Source: Lepidodermella squamata (taxonomy: Eukaryota; Animalia; Gastrotricha). Taken from it: a DNA stretch of 64,000 bases. The notes under the pieces were generated by a model. That model was not told where the DNA came from and searched no databases. It saw only the letters and a program-made list of their open reading frames with translations. Below are positions 1-19,845 of this stretch, piece by piece; the first letter of the stretch is position 1; each line of letters begins with the position of its first letter. Made by a program: the position numbers and the translations under genes. The stretch lies in the NCBI GenBank assembly GCA_047495785.1, contig JBLDXI010000054.1, positions 2,418,001 through 2,482,000 of the forward strand. Direction: 5' to 3'.

Positions 1-2053
1 GCTTCTACTGAAATAATCCCACAAGAGAAGGACATCGAAGCATTCGATGCGAAACGCCTCGAGAAAGCCGATGTCGTGCAATTGGTAACAAACGCCGTGA
101 AAGACCTAACTGCCACCCTTTCAATCTCCCCCTCATTCGCTAAACTACTGCTGTACCTGCTATCGTGGGACAAGGCCGCTATTGTCTCTCGATTCACCTC
201 AAACCGCCTTAAATTCCTCGAAGAATGCCGGCTAAGACCTGACCAAAACGCCGCGAATCCGCAGATTTTGATGCAGAGCAAACAACCGTGCCCGGTCTGC
301 CTCGACCCGGCTACCCAGGGCCATTTAGACCCGGCCAACGACAGCTGTAACCACGCGTTCTGCGCAACATGTTGGGGCGAGCATTTTCGAATTCAAATGA
401 CGTCATCGGGGTCTATCGAGATCGAATGCATGGCCGATGGGTGCCGCGTCCTCATGCTTGAAGACTTCATTCTACGCCACTTGCCGAGCCAAAACGAACG
501 CAGCGAGTATTCAGATATAGTTTTCAAATCGCTATGCCGGCGAAATCCGATGCTGAGCCGATGCCCGGGTGGGAATTGTTCGGCTATCTACTCGACCTCG
601 GAAACGTCCGAGCGGTTGAATAACTCGAGTCTAGGTCGGGTTATCTGCGAGCTGTGCTCGACTAAATTTTGTTTTCGATGCTGTGCCGACTACCACGCGC
701 CGACTTCATGCCGCGATATCGCCATGTGGCTGCTGAAATGTCGCGACGAGTCAGAAACGCTGAACTACCTGCGTGCGAATACGAAGGACTGCCCGAAATG
801 TGCGGCGATTATTGAGAAGAACGGCGGGTGTAATCACATGAGTTGTACGCGGTGTAAGCACAACTTTTGCTGGGTGTGCCTCGGCGACTGGCAGGCGCAT
901 AACAATTCGTACGAGTGCAACCGTTACCGCCCGTCCGAGGCGACGGATGGCAATGTTGCGCGAGAGGCGCTACTGCGGTATTTGTTCTATTTCGAGCGCT
1001 GGGACAACCACTCGAGGTCGCTAGCGAAGGAGGCGGCGATGCTGGAGAGGATTGATAAGCGAATTGATGAGCTGATCAGTATGGGCGACCAGGGTACGTG
1101 GATCGACTGGCGGCCGGTTCGCGAGGCGACTGCGGGGCTGCTGCGGGCGCGCTACACTTTACAATACACCTACCCTCATGCATATCTTCTCAAGGTAAAA
1201 TTACAAAATTGACATTTTCAGTAGTTTCTAGCTTGAATTGTTTTAATTCGGTACAATTTTTCAAAATTTTCCAAGATTAGGGGCTTAGTTACTCAACTTC
1301 TCTAAAATATGGTTTATAGCTTTTAATCCTTTGAATCTCAATTTTCATCTGACCTAACCGATATATCCCATTATCATGCATCTTTTGCGCTATTACAAGT
1401 TACAGATTACAAGTTGGACTTCAGCCTACTTGGCCGATATCGATTTTTTAAATCAGTGATTTTTCCGATATCAGCAGTCTTGGAAGCCAACAATGAAAAA
1501 TATTTTACATACCTTATGGTACCAGGTAGCTAAAATATTTGAGAGAAGTATTTGAAACTTGAAAGAATGATCGGGAAAAGTTGGTGCTGGAGCCTCAATT
1601 TTATACGAAGACAAATTAGTTGGACCCTTATTTTTCACTAGTGGCTAGAATCGCTCTGCTAGGGATTTTAACTTTCCCTTATTTTTGGCCATTTTTCTTG
1701 CTGAATCCTAATTATTTAGTGGAATCCACCTTAATAGTGCTAATAATCAGCATTAAGTAGCCTTCGTAACTGGGAACTCCCATGCTTATTTTCTCTTTTT
1801 TATTGATCGAATATTTATTCGATTTATTGACCACATTTTATTAATTTTACATAATTTTACCCAGGATGACACTGTAAAGGCGCTATTCGAAAACAGTCAA
1901 GCTAGACTGGAACTCGAGGTCGAAAACCTGTCGCACTTGCTGGAGCGTTTCGATTTCGGAGACCGCGCTTCCATCGTCGCGAAAGCTACTATTGTCGAGA
2001 AACGGCGCGTGATATTACTGCAAGACTTCGCTCTTCCGTCTTCAGCGCAGTGA
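1..2053 (+). CDS. ARIH2: Ariadne-type RBR E3 ubiquitin ligase, 5'-truncated; exons <1-1194 and 1865-2053
   Basis: RING1-IBR-RING2 (CPKC..IEKNGGCNHMSC..C.H.FCWVC) and Ariadne domain. Donor caag|gtaaaa at 1194. Last exon DDTVKALFENSQARLELEVENLS..EKRRVILLQDF..TGA resembles the short ARIH2 C-terminus. Confidence 0.9.
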
Positions 2054-2657
2054 AAGCACTTTGATTCACGTTGAATCATTTGAAACATGAACGAAGTCTT
2101 TCTTTTACTGCAAATTTTCTTACACTTGAGATATATCAATAGTAATAATACTACGTTGACGATTGTTAAGGTGCTTTGTCGCGAATCTCGCCTGGAGAAA
2201 ATCAATAATTTCACCCAAAAAAAAACAGAAAATGTTATAGCTTGAATAACCCGGTTAAATGCATGCCGCTTATACTCTAGTTTGCTAATTTTCAAAACAC
2301 AAGCAATGTAAACCCGCGGAATTTTCCCCCGATTTTCTACGACATTTTTTTCTCGTCGCCTGTACCAAGTACAATTTGGCCCACCTTGACAATTTATATT
2401 ATAATGTATGATGCAACATACTTGTTATCTTTATTCCAGCAGATGTGAAACTTGACCTATCACTCTTTTAGAACGCGTGACAAAGATTTCGCTAGTCGCG
2501 ATCCGGAAAAATGAGAAATTTTCGTTGTTTTATTCTGGGTTAATTTTTTTAGATTTGCGATATTTATATCATTACTTGAGATGAAACTCGCTGGTATCAA
2601 TACTCATCAGGTTTGTTGTTTTAAAATATTTATCTAAAACTGGTTAAATGAAATGAA

Positions 2658-2714
2658 ATGATGATCATAGTTATCCCTGTCAGACACCAATTTGGTGATA
2701 TTTTTGGTATCTGA
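2658..2714 (+). ncRNA. Box C/D snoRNA copy 1 (snR38/SNORD1-like, single guide)
   Basis: C box ATGATGA, guide AGTTATCCCTGT, D' CAGA, D box CTGA, terminal stem tgaaa/tttca; 76 nt upstream of the acceptor at 2790. Confidence 0.85.
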
Positions 2715-2866
2715 TTTCAAATTCTTTGCTATAAGCTCATCAATTTTTTATTTTATTTTATTTTTTCGTAATTGATTTTCTCCTTTTCAGGTCATTATAT
2801 GCGCGAATGGTGATTTGAAACGTAAGGTAAATAACCGATTACATTTATAGTGAAAATAATTAGTTG

Positions 2867-2925
2867 ATGATGAACGTTATCCCTGTCTGTATGTCAAATC
2901 TGTAGACACAATTCCTCGTTTCTGA
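2867..2925 (+). ncRNA. Box C/D snoRNA copy 2 (double guide)
   Basis: ATGATGA-ac-GTTATCCCTGT-CTGT...AATTCCTCGTTT-CTGA; 75 nt to acceptor. Confidence 0.9.
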
Positions 2926-3117
2926 CATTATTTTATTGAATAGTTGTCTTATGAATGGATTTTTTTCTCGCATCAGCTTTAAATACTTGCTATTTTTCAG
3001 GGTTAATTCAATACGCTTCAATGGCTTCTCGAAAGCGGCCCTGCTAAAACCACAGCTAATAGAAGGTAAGTAATGTCCTTGTTTGGTCTGAACTCTGAAC
3101 AGCTCTCAAACCGTTTT

Positions 3118-3173
3118 ATGATGAACGTTATCCCTGTCTGTAAATTCATGGAGACACAATTCCTCGTTTCTGA
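3118..3173 (+). ncRNA. Box C/D snoRNA copy 3 (double guide)
   Basis: Same boxes and guides; 73 nt to acceptor. Confidence 0.9.
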
Positions 3174-3337
3174 TTTCTCGATTTAACGTCGAATTCATGA
3201 ACCTTGCACTAACTCATCGGCTAATTTATTTATTTCTTTTACCCAGAAATGCGAAGATGGCTGACTGGCTGATGGCTACAATTTATAAATCGAGTGGTGA
3301 GTTATAGCCAATTTTTATTAGTTTACGATAGAATTCG

Positions 3338-3394
3338 ATGATGAGCGTTATCCCTGTCTGTATAACATCTGTAGACACAATTCCTCGTTTCTGA
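3338..3394 (+). ncRNA. Box C/D snoRNA copy 4 (double guide)
   Basis: Same boxes and guides; 69 nt to acceptor. Confidence 0.9.
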
Positions 3395-3666
3395 TGTTTC
3401 TATCCACCTCAATATTTTGAAAAAAATATGCGGGTTCATTAATTTGAAAATATGCTGTTTCAGGTATTGTTCGATAGCATTTCGCTGCTGGCAGAAGTTG
3501 GAGATTTCTATAATTTGTCCACTAATGATTCATTATTTCCTTGATTGCTAAGTTTTAATTTGTGAATTTCAGATTTGGAAACCTCGTTTTTATCTCGAAC
3601 TCGTTATCGCCAGCTCTTGAAAGGTAATAAAATATCATGGTTTTCTCGTCCCTTCATTTTTCGATA

Positions 3667-3723
3667 GTGATGAGCGTTATCCCTGTCTGTATAAAATCTG
3701 TAGACACAATTCCTCGTTTCTGA
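3667..3723 (+). ncRNA. Box C/D snoRNA copy 5 (double guide)
   Basis: C box GTGATGA, both guides, CTGA; 77 nt to acceptor. Confidence 0.9.
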
Positions 3724-3909
3724 ATTTGGATATTTCTATTATTCCTCCACTTATGATTTTATAGCTTCCGGAGCTATAAATTTAATTTTTTTTATTTCAG
3801 ATTTGGAGCCTCTCAAACTTCAAATCCCTCTGTCCTCTTGAACTGGCTGTCCCGGCTATTGAGAGGTAGTTGAATTCAGTGTTGCTCGTGAAACCGTGAA
3901 GCTTTGATA

Positions 3910-3968
3910 ATGATGAGCGTTATCCCTGTCTGTATCTAAAATCTGTAGACACAATTCCTCGTTTCTGA
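3910..3968 (+). ncRNA. Box C/D snoRNA copy 6 (double guide)
   Basis: Same boxes and guides; 72 nt to acceptor. Confidence 0.9.
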
Positions 3969-4135
3969 TACTTATAGCTCAATATTGCTCTGATATCTGA
4001 TCTACATTTGCCTAATCCAAATATTTACCCCATTTTTCAGGGCATGTGCGGTGGTTTTGCGGTGGGAAGTCCAGTTCAACGTTTGAATGAAAGGTGAGTC
4101 TGAATTCTGAAATGGCAGACCTATTACGTATTTAA

Positions 4136-4192
4136 ATGATGAACGTTATCCCTGTCTGTATGTCAAATCTGTAGACAACTCTGTAATTCTGA
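4136..4192 (+). ncRNA. Box C/D snoRNA copy 7 (28S guide intact, D-box guide replaced)
   Basis: GTTATCCCTGT retained; D guide reads ACAACTCTGTAATT before CTGA; 77 nt to acceptor. Confidence 0.85.
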
Positions 4193-4369
4193 ATTCTAAC
4201 TAGCACCAAAATTCAAAAATCAATTTCTTAACGGCAACTTTCTTTAATGGGCGATTTTTTCCATTTCAGAAATTGCGCGCTTTTCTGGAGGCAAGAGCAT
4301 GGTCGAGCCTATTTCTGTCGATTACAAGGTGATTTTCTTAACAGTATTTATGGCTTTTAACTTTCTTAG

Positions 4370-4426
4370 ATGATGAGCGTTATCCCTGTCTGTATCAAAT
4401 CTGTAGACACAATTCCTCGTTTCTGA
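4370..4426 (+). ncRNA. Box C/D snoRNA copy 8 (double guide)
   Basis: Same boxes and guides; 75 nt to acceptor. Confidence 0.9.
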
Positions 4427-4589
4427 AGAAATTAAAAAAGATCAGGCTAAATCATTTTCTATTTATAACCTATCTTATGAATGGTTTCATTTCGTTTTCA
4501 GAATCTTCCAGCAGCAGCGAAATCAACTCGGCCAAATGTGCTAAAAGAGGTGAGTAACATCTTCAGATTTTCCCCTGGGCTTTCTGATC

Positions 4590-4645
4590 ATGATGAGCGT
4601 TATCCCTGTCAGTACAACCATGTTGACAAAATTCCTCGTTTCTGA
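4590..4645 (+). ncRNA. Box C/D snoRNA copy 9 (double guide)
   Basis: Both guides; D'/C' region GTCAGTA..TGTTGAC shows a compensatory change relative to GTCTGTA..TGTAGAC; 75 nt to acceptor. Confidence 0.9.
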
Positions 4646-4837
4646 TGTTCCTCTTATCAAAAAATTATTAATATTTATTTTCATTTTGAGATTAAATTTC
4701 ATTTTGGGTTCGTTTTTCAGAAGCAAACTGTAACCACTGAGCCATTCAGCCGCTACAAAATCGAACCGGGAAATATCGAGACTTGGCTGCTGTCTTGTTA
4801 GGTAAGCACGATTCATACCCAATCAGCCATAAATTTG

Positions 4838-4893
4838 GTGATGATAGTTTTGTAGATCTGTAAATTCATGGAGACAAAATTCCTCGTTTCTGA
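4838..4893 (+). ncRNA. Box C/D snoRNA copy 10 (18S guide intact, D' guide replaced)
   Basis: GTGATGA-TAGTTTTGTAGAT-CTGT...AATTCCTCGTTT-CTGA; 78 nt to acceptor. Confidence 0.85.
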
Positions 4894-5076
4894 AAAGAAT
4901 TTCTCCCTATACTTTGTTACTCGGATTAATTTTTGGGATCTTTGGTAATCAGAATTATTTTTGTTTTTCAGTTCTGGTTTCGAATTATCTGATTCACGGC
5001 TGGATCGAATCGGCGTGAAAAGTCAGGACAATGTGAGTTATTTTAGGCGTTTTTGTTTGGGTTTAGTTCTCGCCAT

Positions 5077-5133
5077 ATGATGAGCGTTATCCCTGTCTGT
5101 ATAAATTCTGTAGACACAATTCCTCGTTTCTGA
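5077..5133 (+). ncRNA. Box C/D snoRNA copy 11 (double guide)
   Basis: Same boxes and guides; 77 nt to acceptor. Confidence 0.9.
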
Positions 5134-5321
5134 AGTTGAAGATATCTATTTTTCTCCCACTTTAAGATTTACCATATTCTGGAGCTACACATTTTTATTT
5201 TGCATTTCAGATTTGGAAGCCTCTCGAACTTTTCCCTGTTTCCTCGTGAACTCGTTGTCCCAGCTGTTGAGAGGTAATTGAATTTCTATTCTTTTCTCGT
5301 GATCCCTTGAAATTTTCGATA

Positions 5322-5380
5322 ATGATGAGCGTTATCCCTGTCTGTATCTAAAATCTGTAGACACAATTCCTCGTTTCTGA
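5322..5380 (+). ncRNA. Box C/D snoRNA copy 12 (double guide)
   Basis: Same boxes and guides; 76 nt to acceptor. Confidence 0.9.
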
Positions 5381-5540
5381 GTAAAAATCTTTTGATATAG
5401 TGGAGTCTAGAATTGAGCTTTTTCAATAATTTTTCATCAAATTCTCGATTTTTCAGGTTCTCATACTACAAAGCTACGAATTGCGGCACAAATTTGATGT
5501 AAGTTTTTATGAATTATTTAAGATTTCTTCGTCCAAGTTG

Positions 5541-5596
5541 ATGATGAACGTTATCCCTGTCTGTAAATTCATGGAGACAAAATTCCTCGTTTCTGA
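5541..5596 (+). ncRNA. Box C/D snoRNA copy 13 (double guide)
   Basis: Same boxes and guides; 85 nt to acceptor. Confidence 0.9.
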
Positions 5597-5781
5597 TAAA
5601 CAATGACCATAGCTTTCTTCCATCAAACTGATTTCAGATGTTATCGTATTCTTCATGACTAAATTTTTGTAATTTTTGCAGGCGTTTCAATTCGAGTTTA
5701 ACCGAGAAGACGCTGTGCTACGTAACCGTCCCCTAAAATCGTAAGTTGATCGAATAGTTTTCAAGCTGTTCTGTGCGATCT

Positions 5782-5839
5782 ATGATGAACGTTATCCCTG
5801 TCTGTATGAAAATCTGTAGACACAATTCCTCGTTTCTGA
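5782..5839 (+). ncRNA. Box C/D snoRNA copy 14 (double guide)
   Basis: Same boxes and guides; 75 nt to acceptor. Confidence 0.9.
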
Positions 5840-6001
5840 ATATTTTCGAAATCCAACTTATTTCATGGATTATCATGGAATTATTTTTGTTAATCGAATT
5901 TTATTTTTTTGCAGAACGATCGAACATTGTTGCAGACCGTCGATGCGGTATTAGACAAAGGTGATTTTTTTGCCTCTCAATTTGCCCTAGTCATAGATTT
6001 C

Positions 6002-6060
6002 ATGATGAACGTTATCCCTGTCTGTATCTAAAATCTGTAGACAAAATTCCTCGTTTCTGA
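6002..6060 (+). ncRNA. Box C/D snoRNA copy 15 (double guide)
   Basis: Same boxes and guides; 68 nt to acceptor. Confidence 0.9.
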
Positions 6061-6325
6061 TGTTTCTATCCACCTTAATATTTTGAAAAAGGTACGCGGG
6101 ATTGTTAATTAGAAAAATTATTTTTCAGGTATTGTTCGGTAGCATTTCGCTGCTGGCTGGAGGAGGCCGCCAATGTCACAACGTGTTCTGATGGCCCAGG
6201 TTACGATTTTTAAGATGGAATACTCGCATTATGTTTTTGCTGATATCATGTTTCGGCACTGCTAAATTTGAGTCGAAAAATTTAATTTCTAGATTTATTT
6301 TTTGGAAAATAATTGAAACTTGACA

Positions 6326-8553
6326 ATGGCGTCAGTCGTTCCTCACCTTGCCTCGCCGAACTTGTCGGGCGAAAAAATTCGCAAATTGAACGATATCGCG
6401 TACCACATTCGTATCCACTCGATTCGATGCACAACCGCCGCCGGCTCTGGCCACCCTACCTCATCGGCCTCGATTGCCGACCTCCTATCGGTCCTGTTCT
6501 TCGACACGATGGTCTACTCGCAGCAGGACCCTAGCAACCCGGCTGCTGATCGTTTCATCCTATCGAAGGGCCACGCGTGCCCGGCGTTGTACGGCGCCTG
6601 GGTTGAGGCCGGGTTCTACCCGGAGTCGGAGCTGGACAAAGTTCGATCGTTCGGATCTGACCTCGAGGGCCACCCGACCCCGCGTCTTCGTGAAATCGAT
6701 GTAGCCACCGGGTCACTGGGACAGGGTCTTTCGGTAGCCGCTGGTATGGCCTATGTTGGAAAGTACCTGGACAAAGCGCCTTACAAGGTATTTATTATAG
6801 ATCTTTATCTATTTATTGAATATTTTTCAAGAAATCCTGCTTAAAAATCTAAAAATTGAATAATTATTGCCCCTTGAAATTAATTCAATATTTTTTTCAG
6901 GTCTTTTGCATCATTGGTGACGGTGAGTCTCAAGAGGGCTCAATCTGGGAGGCCCTCTCCTTTGCCAGCTTCTACAAACTCGACAATTTGGTGCCTATTT
7001 TCGACGTGAACCGCCTCGGCCAGTCCGACCCGACCATGCTGCAACACAACATGGACGCCTACCGCGCCCGAGTCGAGTCGTTCGGCTGGCGGGCTTTCAT
7101 CGTTGACGGCCACGATGTCGTCTCAATCTGCAGCGCCCTGCGCGAGGCCCGCAACGGCGGCATCCCGACTTGCATCCTCGCGAAAACGTTCAAGGGCCAC
7201 GGCATCCCCGATATCGAAGATGTTCTGAACTGGCACGGCAAGCCGCTGGCTAAAGACCAGGCGCATAAGGCCATCGAATTTTTGAAGTACCGCATGTCCT
7301 CGGCCGAGGCTGCTCCGTCGGGCTCGCACGGCCTGGTCGCCACCGCCCCGACCTGGACCGTCCCGCCGCCGGTTGATTTCCCCCATTTGACCCTGTCCGA
7401 GGCCCCGAGTTACAAACTGGGCGATAAAGTCGCGAGCCGTAACGCTTACGGAACCGCCTTAATCAAACTAGGCACTGCCTCTGACCGCGTCATGGTCTTT
7501 GACGCTGATGTCAAAAATTCGACGATGACTATCGGATTCAAGAACAAATTCCCAACCCGTTTTGTCGAGTGCTTCATCGCTGAGCAGAATTTGATCGGAG
7601 CGGCTATGGGTGCTGCGTGCCGCAACCGAGCTGTTGTCTTCGCCGGGACATTCGCGTGCTTCCTGACCCGTGCTTTCGACCAGTTGCGCATGGGCTGCAT
7701 CTCCCAGACGAATTTGAACGTCATGGGCTCGCACGCTGGTGTTTCGATCGGGGCGGATGGCCCGAGCCAAATGGCTCTCGAGGATATCGCCATGTTCCGA
7801 TCCCTGCCTACCTGCACTGTTTTCTACCCATCCGACGCTGTTTCGACCGAACGAGCGGTTGAGCTGGCCGCCCAGACTAAGGGCTTGACGTTCATCCGAA
7901 CCACCCGAGGCGCTACCCCGGTTATCTACAAGAACGACGAGCCGTTCCATGTTGGCCAGGCGAAGGTTGTTCGCCACAGCGCGGGTGCTAAGTGCGTGGT
8001 GATTGGCGCCGGTGTCACTCTGGTCGAGGCGCTCAAGGCCGCGGATGAGTTGGCGAAATCTGGCATCGAAACAACGGTTATTGATCCGTTTACGATTAAG
8101 CCGATCGACGTTAAGACGATTGGTGATGCTGTTAAGGCGGCTGGCGGCCGTTTGGTTGTTGTCGAAGACCATTACGCTCAAGGTGAGACTAATTTATTAT
8201 ATTCGATTTTTTGAAATTTTGAAATTCAGAACATTTATAATTATAATTTAAAAAATTTGAAAAAATTCAATTTATATTTTGGTAATTTCTTAAATTTTTT
8301 TCTAATAATTTTATTCGTTTTTGTAAAATCCCTCCTTAATTTTAAATTTTTTCCTAATTTTTAAGGTGGCATCGGCGAGGCTGTTTTGTCAGCTTTGACG
8401 TTCGAAACTTCGCCGCCTGTTCAAATCACGGCTGTTCAACACCTGGCCGTCCGCGAGGTGCCGCATTCCGGCCCTGAGGAGACGATTCTCGCGCATTACG
8501 GCATCGATTCCGGTGCTATCATTGCCGCGGTCAAGAAAGTTGTTGCCGCTTGA
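6326..8553 (+). CDS. TKT: Transketolase, paralog 1; exons 6326-6787, 6901-8182, 8366-8553
   Basis: [42 protein letters not shown] motif, [26 protein letters not shown]; canonical splice sites give a continuous animal-type TKT. Confidence 0.95.
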
Positions 8554-10808: not shown

Positions 10809-13800
10809 ATGGCCGATAAGGTGAAGAAATTGCAAGATATTGCGAATAACATTCGCATCCACGGCATTCGCTGTACAACAGCTGCCGGCTCTGGCCACCC
10901 TACGTCGTCGGCCTCAATCGCCGAAATTCTGTCCGTCCTTTTCTTCGACGCGATGGTCTACAACAAGAAATCGATTCGTGACGGCGAATCGGACCGTTTC
11001 ATCCTGTCCAAGGGCCACGCTTGCCCCGCCTTGTACGGCGCCTGGGTTGAAGCCGGGTTCTACAAGGAGTCGGATTTGGACCAGGTGCGAAGCGCGACTT
11101 CGGATCTCGAGGGCCACCCGACGCCGCGTCTGCCTGAAATTGATGTAGCCACTGGTTCTCTCGGCCAGGGGCTGTCTGTCGCGGCTGGTATGGCGTATGT
11201 CGGCAAGTACGTGGACAAAGCGCCTTACAAGGTATTTACAGAAATTTCAAGTACTTATATCTATATTTAATTTAGTTTGATATTTTGTCATACTTGACTA
11301 AAATTCAGAAAATTTTTCTAAAATAAAAATGTATTCACTTGAAAATGATATATGATGCAGTCTTTTCCGAGCCCGTGACTACCGATCTGTGAAATGATTC
11401 AACTTCTCAAACCCAATAGAAGATTACGCATAAGGAGCATTTGGATTATTGACAATACAATGTCAAAAGGCTATTCGACTTTGCGGACAGTTTTAGCTAG
11501 TTTGATCTTCTTAGTAGCACCTTGTTTCCTTGTTCTTTTTACGTGCGGTAAATGGCCGAGTAAACTAACATTCGATTGATCTGAAATTCGCGCTACTACA
11601 GTAGTTATAATTTCGATAGCATCTGCGTGGAGATATCCCAATTTGTTGATGACTTCGCTAACTTCTCCCTGATCAAGCAAACGAGTAATAAATGTTGAAA
11701 ACTTATTCTGATAATGTCTGAATAGTCTGAATAATGTATATTGCAAAGGACAAGATGAATCGCTGATAGAATATGGAAACGATTTTTCCCCGTAACGTAG
11801 TAAAGTCAGATCTTGTCGCTATTTCTGCAACTTCCATGCAATGAGTATCTACAACATCCGCGTCAACACGTTAGAAATGCGACCAAAAAACTGGCCGTTG
11901 AACAAACGGTAGATAAGCCGGCTGCAATCCACAACCTCTATTGGAAGTAGGATTCCTGAGAACGCTAGGCAGAAGGGCACTGAATGAGTCCAGAGCGAAG
12001 GACGACGGAGACGCGTAAAAATCGGGCCAATCGGCTCGTAATGATCGGCGAGAGCCCAAACGCCGGTTCCGTTCAGTTGATTCTCCCACAAATTCAAGGT
12101 AATCGCTTCGGCCAATCCTTGAACACTCAGCTTTCTTAATAACTAAAAACTACCGGAAAGAATTCTATACTAGAAATGTACATGAGTAGACCGGTGAAAA
12201 ACGGTATTTATATAGCAAAACGGTTTATGAATGTTCTAATCATAGCTAGCGTTTGGATATTTTTAAGTGACCAGAAAGCTTGCCGCGTACTCGAGTACAT
12301 TAGTAGTTTGTCAAATTTGTCTTCAGAGTAAACAGGATTTTGATAGAGCGATTTTAGAGAAAAGGCCGTCGACAATTTGTCATTTTCGACCCATTTCTCG
12401 TACCATCTCTCAATTTTTGGTACAACTCAACTGTTACGAGGCCAACCGGGCGGCCTCCTTTTGAGGCGCGACTATTGCGGGGCGAGTCGAGGCATTGTTG
12501 TCGTTGTCGATGCTACATGCAACCGCTAGGCTCGAATTCAGCCGTGTGCTTGATCGTAGGATGCGCGTGTTCGGGCGCAGCAGGGTTTGACTGTGTGCTA
12601 TAACCGGCGGAAACGATGAGCTGAAAGAAACTCTTTGTCACAATGTACGTGCAACATTTTGTTGCATTTCTTGCACTTGTGCCGACAGTTTTTCTTGCAT
12701 AGTGCACAGCGGTTCTGATTCGCAGAAACCAACTTATATTTTCAAGTTTGCGACAACTCGCAAAAATTGATTACTTTGAAATAATTAAATTAATTATCAT
12801 TTATCTGATTACACTTTTTCCGGAAAATTTTTGCCGCGGCTCAGTAATAATTTGCCGCTCAAAGTTCAAACATTTTTTCTCCATGAACGATTTGAAACCC
12901 TTCGCATCCAGCGCCTTCTCTTGAATTTCGTAGCTCACGAGCCCTGACGATGGCTTAACAGCAACAACAACAACGGTAAAATGATGACCCGGACTGGTGG
13001 TCGGCATCTGCTGGATTGCCCGCTTCCCCCTCCTCGCCCGGCCAAAAGCTCGCCTCGTCCATAACTGAGCCGAGTACATATTACTGAGCCGCGGAAATTT
13101 TTTTCCGGATAAGGTGTATCCAACTCAGCCAAGTTAACGACAACTCCGCAACTGAACTAAATTAATTCAGATTTAATAAAGGATTAGATTTGTAGCTGGA
13201 TCTGTAGTCTAAAACCACTTCTTCAGAATCGTGTCTGGTCTGTGCTTGCTGAGCTTGTTCATAGTCCTTCTTCATCTGCTTCGTTGGGACAACCTGGTTC
13301 TCCAAGGTCGTCCACATCCCAGTTCACCGCGTGCCAAATTACAAATTAATATAAACAAATTAATTAAGAAAATATCAAAATAATTTTTTAAATAATTATT
13401 AAATATGATATATTATTTTGGGTACATAATTTAAAAAATACGAACTTTTTTTGTGTGCATTTGAGAATTTTTAAGGACTAAAAATTAATCAATTTAAAAA
13501 ATTAATCAATTTAAAAAATTAATTTTGAGAATTTTTGAGAATTTTAAATAAAATATTAAAATTATGTAGAATAATTATTTTTAAATAATTACTAAATATA
13601 TGATTTTTAGGTTTACTGCCTGCTTGGCGATGGCGAGTCGCAAGAAGGCTCCAACTGGGAGGCGCTCTCCTTCGGCAGTTTCTACAAACTCGACAATTTG
13701 GTGCCCATTTTCGACGTGAACCGCCTCGGCCAGTCGGACCCGACCATGTTCCAGCACGACATGGACGCGTACAAGGCCCGCGTCGAGTCGTTCGGCTGGA

Positions 13801-15515
13801 AGGCGCTCGTCGTCGACGGCCACGACGTGCCCGCCCTCGTCGCCGCCCTCAACCAGGCGAAGACCTCGGGCGTGCCCACCGCCATCCTCGCCCGCACCTT
13901 CAAGGGCAAGGGCATCCCTGAGGTCGAAGATTTACTCAACTGGCACGGAAAGCCACTGCCAAAGGACAAAGCAGCGGCTGCGATTGAGACGATCCGAAGC
14001 CGGTTGTCCTCCCCGGACGCCGCGAAGGCAGCCAACCACGGCCTGGAACCAGCCGCGCCCTCCTGGAAGGTCGACCCGGCCGTCGACTACGCCCACCTTA
14101 AACTATCCGAACCACCCAGCTACAAAATAGGCGATAAAGTCGCGAGCCGTAACGCGTACGGAACCGCCTTAATCAAACTAGGCACCTCGAGCAAACGCGT
14201 TATGGTGTTCGACGCTGAGGTGAAAAATTCGACGATGACGCTCGGGTTCAAGAACAAGTTCCCGGAGCAGTTTGTCGAGTGTTTCATCGCCGAGCAGAAT
14301 TTGGTCGGGGCGGCGACGGGGGCGGCGTGCCGCGACCGCGCTGTTGTCTTCGCGAGCACCTTCGCCGCGTTCTTCTCCCGCGCCTACGACCAGTTGCGCA
14401 TGGGCTGCATCTCGCAGACGAATTTGAACGTCTGCGGGTCGCATGCCGGTGTTTCGATCGGGGCGGATGGTCCGAGCCAAATGGCCCTGGAAGATATCGC
14501 CATGTTCCGCGCCCTGCCGACCTGCACTGTTTTCTACCCGTCCGACGCTGTTTCTACCGAACGAGCGGTTGAACTGGCCGCCCAGACTAAGGGCTTGACT
14601 TTCATCCGAACCACCCGAGGCGCCACCCCGGTTATTTACAAGAATGATGAGCCGTTCCATGTTGGCCAGGCGAAGGTTGTTCGCGAGGGTAAGTCGCCCA
14701 AGGCGGTGATTATTGGGTCTGGTATCACGTTGGCTGAGGCGGTTGTTGCGGCGAATCACTTGGCGGCGAAGGGCGTTGAGACGACGGTGATTGATCCGTT
14801 TACGATCAAGCCCATTGATTCGAAGACGATTGGCGCGGCTGTTACGGCGGCTGGCGGTAACTTGGTTGTTGTTGAAGACCACTACGCTCAGGGTATGCAA
14901 TTTATTCAAACATAAATTTATTTATGTTAAAAATCAATTTTTGAAAAATTTATTTGAAATTTCAAAATTCAAGATTAATATATTTTAGTATATATTCTAA
15001 AATGTAAGCACTTCGAACAAATGGAGTAGCGAGACTGAACAGATTTTTATAAATAAACTGGAAACTATTTTAGCGTGAAATTCAGAATTCGAGAGTTTTA
15101 CGGCGAAATGTAGTGCCAAGACGTTCAAATTAGTCATAGCACCTCAATTGTAACGGTGCAATTATTTTGAACTTTTATTTTTTGACAATTCGATTTTTAT
15201 AACTGGAAAAATCGATGAAATTAATTGAATCAAAACTCATTTAAAATATTAGGGTGGACAATTTAAAAAACAATTTTCAGAAAGTTTTCTTGATTATTCC
15301 AATTTTTTCAAATTGGTCTGTAATATTTGCTGTAATTCATTTCAGGTGGCATCGGCGAGGCTGTGGTGACTGCGCTTGTCCACGACGGCGTCCACATCAA
15401 GAAATTCAAGCACCTGGCCATCCAGGCCGTGCCGCGCTCCGCACCCGACGAAGAGGTGCTCGCTCTCTTCGGCATCGACCACGCCGCGATTGCCGCCGCT
15501 GTCACTGTCCTGTAA
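10809..15515 (+). CDS. TKT: Transketolase, paralog 2; exons 10809-11231, 13611-14892, 15346-15515
   Basis: Same motifs and the same two intron positions as paralog 1; 2.4-kb first intron. Confidence 0.95.
12812..13116 (-). mobile_element. Internally deleted Tc1/mariner-IS630-like element with a transposase remnant
   Basis: ~38-bp TIRs (cactttttccggaaaa..ccgcggctcagtaata) flanked by TA on both sides. The internal minus-strand peptide TRRAFGRARRGKRA...FTVVVVAV...GLVSYEIQEKALDAKGFKSFME resembles the DDE_3 transposase core. Confidence 0.8.
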
Positions 15516-18666: not shown

Positions 18667-19845
18667 ATGTCGGCCAAGCTTTTCATTCACCGGTCATGCT
18701 GTGTCTTCGGCTACTCGACGCCAATTCTGCGAAGGGTGTCACTTAGCAGCCAGAGATATTCACTTCAAAACATGCCTGAAAACAACGGCAATATTTCCGA
18801 TTTCGGCCGATCAAACGCGCTAATTGAGCATCGAAATCCGGAAAATTGGCTCATGAAGTTGGATCAAACGGCGGCGAAACGGGACTCGATTTCGCCATTC
18901 ATTCAATCGACAGTTATTGGCAACCCTGTTGAATGGTCGATCCGCCTAACGGAACCACCCGGGTACCAACATGGAACCGACCTAGTTTCAACTTTCGCCG
19001 CTTTTAAAACTGCGATTCGAAAGATCAAATTCGTTTTTCAAGTCCATGAGAATGAAATGTTTGAATTCCTTCGCAACATTCCAGGCTCTCTCGAATTGTT
19101 GCCGAATTTATCGAAAATTCTGAAAGTTCGAGACGGCGGTTTCATCGGCCATGCAAATTCATCGCAGAATATCGGAACCTTCCGCCAATCGCCATTCTGC
19201 AACGCAATTTTCCAGCCAAGCGATGCAATTTCGGCTGAAAGGGCGTTGGAACAAGCGGCGAGATACGTCCCGAAAGGCAAAATGTCCGTAATTAGGACAT
19301 CGAATTCTCGCAATGACTTGATGTATTCATCAAACGACGAATTTTCGATTGGGCGGGCGAAAATTTTGCGGAGACCGCCGCCAAATGAGGCGTCGCACTG
19401 TTTAGTTGTGGCCTGCGGTCGGGTTGTAGGCGAGGCGATTAAGGCGGCTGATTATTTAGCCGATGATCATGGCATTCAAATCACCGTCATCGACCCTTTT
19501 ACGGCAAAACCGATCGATGTGAAAACTATTAGCGATGTGATCAGTCAAAATGGCGGAAAATTGGTTATTGCCGAAGAAGACTGTTCGGAAGGTGATAAAA
19601 ATTCATAAAAAAAATATTTTAAATTTTAATAATTCTAATTAGGTGGATTTGGCGAGGGTTTATTGTCCTGTTTATTGTTGGAAAATTTCCCGCCTACGAG
19701 ACTTGAGTGTGTTAGACACCTTGCGGAATCCTATGTTGACTTCAAAGCTGTTGTTTCTGCTGTCCGGTTGGTTTGCGATCGAGTTCGGCAATATCCTGGC
19801 GATGATTCAGAAATTCGGTCACGCAAATTATCTAAGATGAAATGA
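18667..19845 (+). CDS. Divergent truncated transketolase-like protein (C-terminal half only); exons 18667-19591, 19643-19845
   Basis: [33 protein letters not shown], and an EG|GFGE intron at the same position as in TKT1/2; no TPP-binding N-terminal domain. Confidence 0.7.

What the first reader, a model, noticed from the sequence alone, without database searches (positions are those of the whole stretch)
2658..6060. Fifteen copies of one box C/D snoRNA, one per intron of a non-coding exon chain
Seen: a ~57-nt element RTGATGA-guide-CTGT...guide-CTGA recurs 15 times at ~240-nt spacing. Each copy lies inside its own GT-AG intron with the D box 68-85 nt upstream of the acceptor, while exons and intron flanks diverge. 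Established: intronic C/D snoRNAs sit about 70-80 nt from the 3' splice site, and well-known non-coding hosts (UHG, GAS5) mostly carry different snoRNAs. Inference: this host is devoted to amplifying a single guide family, implying dosage selection or concerted evolution.
Basis: partly seen in the sequence, partly recalled or inferred. Interest (0 to 1): 0.88.

Follow-up and report, generated by a model that had tools for sequence, protein, structure and literature searches.

The report
Amplified double-guide snoRNA host gene
A spliced non-coding gene in a tiny invertebrate (probably a gastrotrich) carries 15 related guide RNAs, one per intron. They are predicted to methylate two ribosomal RNA sites, one of which I found mapped only in yeast. 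This is a known kind of gene, but with unusually many copies, and the array is conserved in a distant relative.

Summary
The array is real: 15 box C/D snoRNA genes, one per 167-183-nt GT-AG intron, D box 68-85 nt before the acceptor. An RNA-type run supports splicing of 8 introns.

The copies are not identical. Twelve are double guides: D' pairs with the LSU site of snR38/SNORD1 (yeast Gm2815), D with the SSU site of yeast snR57 (Gm1572). Two have lost one guide, and one belongs to an older single-guide subfamily.

A distant relative has the same ARIH2 > host > transketolase locus with 13 copies, in a different subtype order and with unalignable exons. One copy is missing in about half of the DNA depth here, so units turn over while the total stays similar. 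Mite eIF4G introns carry the same snoRNA as a double, LSU-only or SSU-only guide, suggesting an old protostome double guide.

The layout resembles the mammalian SNORD115/116 arrays and Drosophila Uhg hosts, but the targets are canonical rRNA sites. Mature RNAs, methylation, dosage selection and operon expression are not shown. The scan noted similar single-family arrays elsewhere in this genome (unchecked). New variant of a known kind.

The parts
2553..6267 (+). Non-coding host transcript: 16 short exons and 15 introns; both ends approximate
   Evidence: X2 covers about 2580-2612 and reaches about 6267
2658..2714 (+). copy 1, type B: single LSU guide, canonical snR38-like (Rfam snoR38 42 bits); intron 2611-2790
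2867..2925 (+). copy 2, double guide; intron 2827-3000
   Evidence: loose end at 2827
3118..3173 (+). copy 3, double guide; intron 3066-3246
   Evidence: spliced joint
3338..3394 (+). copy 4, double guide; intron 3297-3463, alternative acceptor 3572
   Evidence: joint and loose end
3498..3579 (+). relic 3' half of a lost unit (74% like 3726-3807), no snoRNA left
3667..3723 (+). copy 5, double guide; intron 3624-3800
   Evidence: joint 3621>3799
3910..3968 (+). copy 6, double guide, identical to copy 12; intron 3866-4040
   Evidence: joint 3863>4039
4136..4192 (+). copy 7, LSU guide only; altered D guide weakly fits the 5.8S G75 region; intron 4094-4269
4370..4426 (+). copy 8, double guide; intron 4329-4501 (predicted)
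4590..4645 (+). copy 9, double guide with a compensatory D'/C' change (A-U for U-A); intron 4550-4720
   Evidence: joint
4838..4893 (+). copy 10, SSU guide only; missing in about half the DNA depth (deletion 4663-4895); intron 4802-4971
5077..5133 (+). copy 11, double guide; intron 5033-5210 (predicted)
5322..5380 (+). copy 12, double guide; intron 5274-5456 (predicted)
5541..5596 (+). copy 13, double guide; intron 5499-5681 (predicted)
5782..5839 (+). copy 14, double guide; intron 5741-5914
   Evidence: joint 5740>5915
6002..6060 (+). copy 15, double guide; intron 5961-6128 (predicted)
2528..2552 (+). unpaired T-rich acceptor before host exon 1 (candidate trans-splice site; counterpart at L017:3209)
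   Evidence: untested
6268..6292 (+). unpaired T-rich acceptor 33 nt before the transketolase ATG (counterpart at L001:4031)
   Evidence: untested
1863..2053 (+). last coding exon of Ariadne-2 (ARIH2), upstream neighbour; its 3' UTR reads on to about 2500
6326..8508 (+). transketolase gene, downstream neighbour (end approximate)

Best explanation
This is a U-snoRNA-host-type gene. Pol II transcribes a chain of short, disposable exons. Splicing releases 15 introns, and each is trimmed to a box C/D snoRNA of roughly 60-70 nt that binds fibrillarin, Nop56, Nop58 and Snu13. Twelve copies are compact double guides: D' directs 2'-O-methylation of the LSU guanosine equal to yeast G2815 (peptidyl-transferase region), and D directs it at the SSU guanosine equal to yeast G1572, three bases before m7G1575. 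The array grows and shrinks by cis-duplication and deletion of exon-intron units. Purifying selection keeps boxes, guides and intron position while exons drift. The host is most likely co-transcribed with its neighbours ARIH2 and/or transketolase, so intron number sets the snoRNA output. SHOWN: structure, splicing of 8 introns, complementarity to proxy rRNAs, conservation in a relative, unit turnover. INFERRED from established snoRNA biology: processing, RNP assembly, methylation. SPECULATIVE: dosage selection and operon expression (about 0.5 each).
For: Geometry and chance control. Spliced joints in X2 only. The D' guide pairs 11 bp with three fungal LSU rRNAs, D'+5 at G2814 of L013; the D guide pairs 11-12 bp with SSU rRNAs, D+5 at G1570 of L014. 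snR38 = Gm2815 and snR57 = Gm1572 (PMC5344495). Rfam snoR38 matches with an identical guide. The C'/D' stem covaries: C-G in 28/28 sequences; the next pair is U-A, A-U or U.G in 26/28 and broken only in two copies that have lost their D' guide. The SSU guide stays intact in copies without the LSU guide (copy 10, three copies in the relative, mite L022). A syntenic 13-copy array exists in a relative whose transketolase is 77-85% identical, with no similarity once the snoRNAs are masked. Two subfamilies predate the split (support 98/96).
Against: No small-RNA or methylation data. This species' own rRNA was not available. All Rfam scores are below the gathering threshold (best 42 vs 45). The D' box ends in U in all 14 type-A copies and the C' boxes are degenerate, which could weaken D' activity. 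Terminal stems are only 0-5 bp. No G1572-equivalent methylation is listed in the fly, planarian or Dictyostelium maps. Seven introns have no read support.
Confidence: 0.8

Rival explanations
1. The snoRNAs are functional but their number is neutral. Unequal recombination and conversion make and homogenise copies, and no particular dose is selected.
For: One copy is missing in about half the DNA depth, there is a relic of a lost unit, and there are recent block duplications. The subtype mix differs freely between species: 1 vs 5 type-B copies. The genome reportedly has several such arrays (unchecked).
Against: Totals are similar in two deeply split lineages (15 vs 13; LSU guides 14 vs 10, SSU guides 13 vs 8). 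No copy has broken C or D boxes, although with 15-fold redundancy decay should be nearly free.
Confidence: 0.4
2. The exon chain is not its own gene. It is either the discarded 5' leader (outron) of the transketolase pre-mRNA or a 3' extension of ARIH2, so each neighbour transcript yields 15 snoRNAs.
For: No AATAAA-type signal at the host 3' end in either species. There are under about 100 nt between the ARIH2 3' end and exon 1, and about 40 nt between the last host coverage and the transketolase contig. Unpaired acceptors occur at both ends in both species. Both neighbours are conserved. Fly Uhg6/mfl and Uhg7/RpL23A are coupled in a similar way (PMC1821038, PMC5932544).
Against: No leader and no ARIH2-host or host-TKT joint was seen, and contigs cannot show RNA ends. 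Low host depth also fits nonsense-mediated decay of an ordinary host.
Confidence: 0.35
3. The SSU element is not a methylation guide. It is a pre-rRNA chaperone or timing element: its duplex covers G1575 and could gate the Bud23/WBSCR22 m7G step.
For: No methylation at this position in the fly or planarian maps. The duplex spans the m7G site.
Against: The element abuts a perfect D box, with +5 exactly on the base that is 2'-O-methylated in yeast. Flies and planarians may simply have lost this guide, as several mite lineages have.
Confidence: 0.12
4. A minisatellite or transposon-derived repeat with no RNA function.
For: Regular spacing of about 240 nt; no Rfam hit above the gathering threshold.
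Against: Only the 57-nt core is conserved. Splicing, rRNA complementarity, covariation and cross-phylum conservation all point to RNA function.
Confidence: 0.01

Closest known systems
snR38 / SNORD1A-C / Rfam RF00213 (LSU Gm2815, human Gm4362)
   Same: Identical D' guide, same predicted target, intronic; three copies in human (PMC8817022 table lists snR38A/B/C).
   Different: Much shorter (56-59 nt box to box); 14 LSU-guide copies; 12 of them add a second, SSU guide; scores below Rfam gathering.
Yeast snR57 (18S Gm1572)
   Same: Same predicted nucleotide, also guided from the D box (PMC3116282 lists the snR57 C'/D' guide as inactive).
   Different: No Rfam snR57 match at E<=10. Here it is fused with the snR38 guide. 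The site is absent from the fly, planarian and Dictyostelium maps I read.
Eutherian tandem arrays SNORD113/114, SNORD115/116 and rat Bsr
   Same: One family, one copy per intron of a non-coding exon chain; gains, losses, homogenisation and subfamilies (PMC11028025).
   Different: Those are orphan, imprinted, eutherian and larger. This one has canonical rRNA guides, standard 3'-splice-site spacing, lies in an invertebrate and is wedged between housekeeping genes.
Drosophila Uhg hosts, including Uhg6 behind mfl and Uhg7 behind RpL23A; vertebrate UHG/GAS5
   Same: Spliced non-coding host with intronic rRNA guides, sometimes co-transcribed with a coding neighbour. mfl carries four isoforms of one C/D snoRNA (PMC1821038).
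   Different: Fly families in the Table 1 excerpts I read (PMC11014333) have up to four copies; this host has 15 from one family.

Membership tests
box C/D snoRNA | Box C (RUGAUGA) and box D (CUGA) at the ends | tested here: met
   15/15
box C/D snoRNA | Internal C'/D' motif | tested here: met
   degenerate but covarying stem
box C/D snoRNA | 10-21-nt antisense element next to D or D', with +5 on a known Nm site | tested here: met
   on proxy rRNAs; rule from PMC8162545; sites from PMC5344495
box C/D snoRNA | Fixed position upstream of the 3' splice site in a spliced intron | tested here: met
   68-85 nt; 8 introns read-supported
box C/D snoRNA | Discrete mature RNA bound by fibrillarin, and methylation of the target | not testable with these tools
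   only contigs were available
Rfam snoR38 (RF00213) | D' guide to LSU G2815 | tested here: met
   14 of 15 copies
Rfam snoR38 (RF00213) | Score at or above the gathering threshold of 45 bits | tested here: not met
   best 42.0 (copy 1), others 22-33. A functional counterpart, not filed as a formal member
yeast snR57 family | D guide to SSU G1572 | tested here: met
   13 of 15 copies
yeast snR57 family | Sequence similarity to the family model | tested here: not met
   no snR57 hit at E<=10 or at E<=5
U snoRNA host gene (UHG/GAS5/Uhg type) | Spliced exons without conserved coding capacity | tested here: met
   exon 10 and the long form of exon 5 have stops in all frames; no DNA or translated similarity to the relative; joined model not built
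U snoRNA host gene (UHG/GAS5/Uhg type) | Own promoter with a 5'-TOP start; decay of the spliced RNA | not testable with these tools
   contigs cannot show RNA ends
imprinted eutherian C/D tandem arrays | One family repeated once per intron | tested here: met
imprinted eutherian C/D tandem arrays | Orphan guides in a eutherian imprinted locus | tested here: not met
   rRNA guides; invertebrate-type neighbours
SL trans-spliced operon cistron | Spliced leader at the unpaired acceptors 2552 and 6292 | tested here: inconclusive
   no X2 contig covers 6268-6305 and no leader is among the loose ends shown

The most novel reading that the evidence does not exclude
An old, undescribed protostome double-guide snoRNA couples methylation of the LSU peptidyl-transferase G2815 site with the SSU G1572 site, so far mapped only in yeast. 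In gastrotrichs it sits inside a trans-spliced ARIH2-host-transketolase operon, or in the transketolase outron, and is held at 13-15 copies because intron number, not promoter strength, sets its dose. This would be a non-imprinted, rRNA-guiding counterpart of the SNORD115/116 arrays.
Probability: 0.25. Interest if true: 0.7.

Novelty: new variant of a known kind. Interest (0 to 1): 0.46.

Why it matters
Large single-family C/D arrays have been described as eutherian, orphan and imprinted (PMC11028025). This array has predictable rRNA targets and a full ortholog for comparison, so birth-and-death, conversion and dosage can be tested on a guide whose output (methylation at two named bases) is measurable. 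It also predicts an 18S methylation missing from the animal maps I read, and shows a double guide splitting into reciprocal single guides both within the array and across mite lineages. The biochemistry itself is ordinary.

Tried and rejected
Rfam at the gathering threshold found nothing in the window. Viral-contig scans for rRNA motifs were empty, so I used contaminant eukaryotic rDNA from genome and plasmid records as proxy targets.

No convincing target was found for the altered guide of copy 10, for the three altered D' regions in the relative, or for the D side of type B, which shows only a 7-nt match just 5' of the G2815 site. The altered guide of copy 7 fits the 5.8S G75 region over 9 nt, but with G.U at +5 in the proxies, so it is not accepted. 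A 7-9-nt match of the C' region to 18S about 84 nt upstream of the target was rejected: it is chance-level, overlaps the protein-bound C' box and is broken in several copies.

The tree cannot resolve type-A copies by species, so conversion is not proven. The sigma-70 promoter scan is irrelevant to a eukaryote. A C/D-like string inside FANCD2 coding sequence (L015:6665) was dismissed. Two papers recalled from memory were not held.

One plasmid record from a human sputum sample (H6) was not fetched.
Full report
OBSERVATION. A pattern search of both strands finds 15 box C to box D units of 56-59 nt between 2658 and 6060, all on +, and no other unit with both guides in the window. Each has a GT donor 36-52 nt upstream and a CAG acceptor 68-85 nt downstream, giving introns of 167-183 nt and exons of 36-81 nt; one exon is 160 nt or, with its alternative acceptor, 51 nt. 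An acceptor-like motif falls in that distance range at 5% of random positions outside the array and 10% inside, against 14 of 15 copies. Boxes and guides are 92% identical among copies 2-15, the adjacent 20 bases 30%.

SPLICING. Run X2 (RNA by guess, but it carries spliced transketolase and Ariadne junctions) shows GT..AG joints that remove introns 3, 4, 5, 6, 9, 10 and 14. A loose end at 2827 matches the start of exon 3, and one at 3296 matches the sequence after 3572. The DNA-type run X1 has none of these joints. So the host is transcribed and spliced, and 8 of 15 introns are supported. Contigs cannot show the mature small RNAs or the transcript ends.

ORGANISM AND NEIGHBOURS. Upstream lies the end of Ariadne-2 and downstream an animal-type transketolase, about 62% identical to mollusc and insect proteins; all are on +. 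The best DNA run shares its 2024 study with a 101-Mb organism, and the genome has 147 pieces. This fits the study of the gastrotrich Lepidodermella squamata (122 Mb, 157 contigs) plus C. elegans (PMC11660948). The species name is an inference from metadata, not from sequence.

TARGETS. Rfam gives only sub-threshold matches, best snoR38 at 42 bits against a threshold of 45 for copy 1, with an identical D' guide. This species' rRNA was unavailable, so I used eukaryotic rDNA found as contamination. The D' guide pairs over 11 bp with the LSU, and the fifth base from D' is G2814 of L013. The D guide pairs over 11-12 bp with the SSU, and the fifth base from D is G1570 of L014. These correspond to yeast Gm2815 (snR38) and Gm1572 (snR57), the latter three bases before m7G1575 (PMC5344495; +5 rule PMC8162545). 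Twelve copies have both guides. Copy 7 keeps only the LSU guide, copy 10 only the SSU guide, and copy 1 is a different single-guide form. The G1572-equivalent is not listed in the fly, planarian or Dictyostelium maps. That humans lack it too is my recollection and was not checked here.

STRUCTURE. D' and C' are degenerate but pair with each other. The first pair is C-G in 28 of 28 sequences. The second is U-A, A-U or U.G in 26 of 28, including a double change in copy 9, and fails only in two copies of the relative that have also lost the D' guide. Terminal stems are 0-5 bp, which fits splicing-dependent assembly at a fixed distance from the branch point (PMC8162545).

ORTHOLOG. Transketolase and Ariadne homologs from freshwater-type metagenome assemblies (source habitat not verified) led to overlapping contigs L017 and L001 (99.9% over 3.6 kb). 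Together they give FANCD2 > ARIH2 > host > transketolase with 13 copies: 5 double guides, 3 SSU-only and 5 of the copy-1 type. Transketolase is 77-85% identical in protein. With the snoRNAs masked, the hosts share no DNA or translated similarity. With stops in all three frames of exon 10 and the long exon 5, this argues for a non-coding host. The tree separates the copy-1 type from the double-guide type with 98/96 support across species, so both predate the split. Their order and proportions differ between species, while the totals are similar.

TURNOVER. Within the window four duplicated blocks of 73-87% identity remain, one of them a relic unit without a snoRNA. X1 shows a half-depth 233-nt deletion removing copy 10 and its exon, probably a haplotype, though an amplification artefact is not excluded. 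D' position 4 is U in all 14 type-A copies here but A in the relative's intact-D' copies and in the mite. Double guides are 91% identical within this species, 82% within the relative and 80% between. This is lineage-specific homogenisation; expansion after the split and gene conversion both fit.

WIDER DISTRIBUTION. A metagenome scan for both guides together gave one hit, L003. It lies 76 nt before an acceptor in an eIF4G gene whose nearest named relative is the mite Oppia nitens. The same intron in other mite-like contigs holds LSU-only forms or an SSU-only form. The double guide is thus shared by this animal and an arthropod and has been halved reciprocally. Common ancestry is the simplest reading; independent fusion is not excluded.

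EXPRESSION CONTEXT. In both species exon 1 begins about 60 nt before the first donor, after an unpaired T-rich AG. Another unpaired AG precedes the transketolase ATG, and no AATAAA-type signal ends the host. ARIH2 RNA reaches about 2500 and host RNA about 6267, and the transketolase contig starts at 6306. Scan notes report spliced-leader operons and other single-family snoRNA arrays in this genome (unchecked). An operon, outron or 3'-extension arrangement is therefore plausible, but no leader or joint was seen here.

MECHANISM. Shown: structure, host splicing, guide complementarity, conservation and turnover. Inferred from established biology: release from spliced introns, snoRNP assembly and 2'-O-methylation of the two guanosines (confidence 0.8). 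Speculative: copy number selected to supply dose from a shared housekeeping transcription unit (about 0.5), against neutral birth-and-death with conversion.

COMPARISON AND VERDICT. Cis-duplication within one host is the norm for C/D families (PMC8178906), and double guides assembled or split by recombination are known in fungi. One-family tandem arrays are known as eutherian, orphan and imprinted (PMC11028025), and fly hosts carry up to four isoforms. The locus works like a Uhg host with snR38- and snR57-site guides and is built like SNORD115/116. It fails formal membership of RF00213 (score), of snR57 (no similarity) and of the imprinted arrays (not orphan, not eutherian). New: the copy number for an rRNA guide in an invertebrate, its conservation through turnover, and a guide pairing I did not find in the papers searched. 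New variant of a known kind; interest 0.46.

Noticed in passing
L003:991-1046 (-), L018:371-429, L019:2414-2470, L021:55-107, L022:9532-9596, L024:9807-9859: The orthologous eIF4G intron of mite-like contigs (nearest named protein: Oppia nitens eIF4G3, 58%) holds this snoRNA as a double guide (L003), LSU-only (L018, L019, L021, L024) or SSU-only with a 13-bp match (L022).
   Followed up: yes
window 4663-4895 and 3975-4055: Run X1 shows two deletions at about half depth: one removes exon 10 and copy 10, the other removes the acceptor of intron 6. Probably the second haplotype.
   Followed up: partly
window 10809-15503 and 19165-19593: A second, tandem transketolase gene, with an unpaired acceptor at about 10770 and no snoRNAs upstream, plus a diverged transketolase fragment (39%).
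   Followed up: partly
L001:1004-1067 and 3604-3666: Two copies in the relative share an altered D'-side element and a broken C'/D' stem; a 9-nt match to an LSU stretch (L014 LSU position 1895) is unconvincing.
   Followed up: partly
L001:2178-2889: One 700-nt intron of the relative's host has no snoRNA and contains simple repeats.
   Followed up: no
L012, L013, L014: Three PLSDB 'plasmids' of bacteria are eukaryotic, fungal-like rDNA units (contamination); several GTDB genomes also contain animal-like rDNA (L004-L011).
   Followed up: partly
window 40983 (-): A lone C/D-like pattern on the minus strand without either guide.
   Followed up: no
L022:1301-1364, L025:15355-15411: Further C/D-like candidates 62-73 nt before an AG in mite-like contigs.
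   Followed up: no
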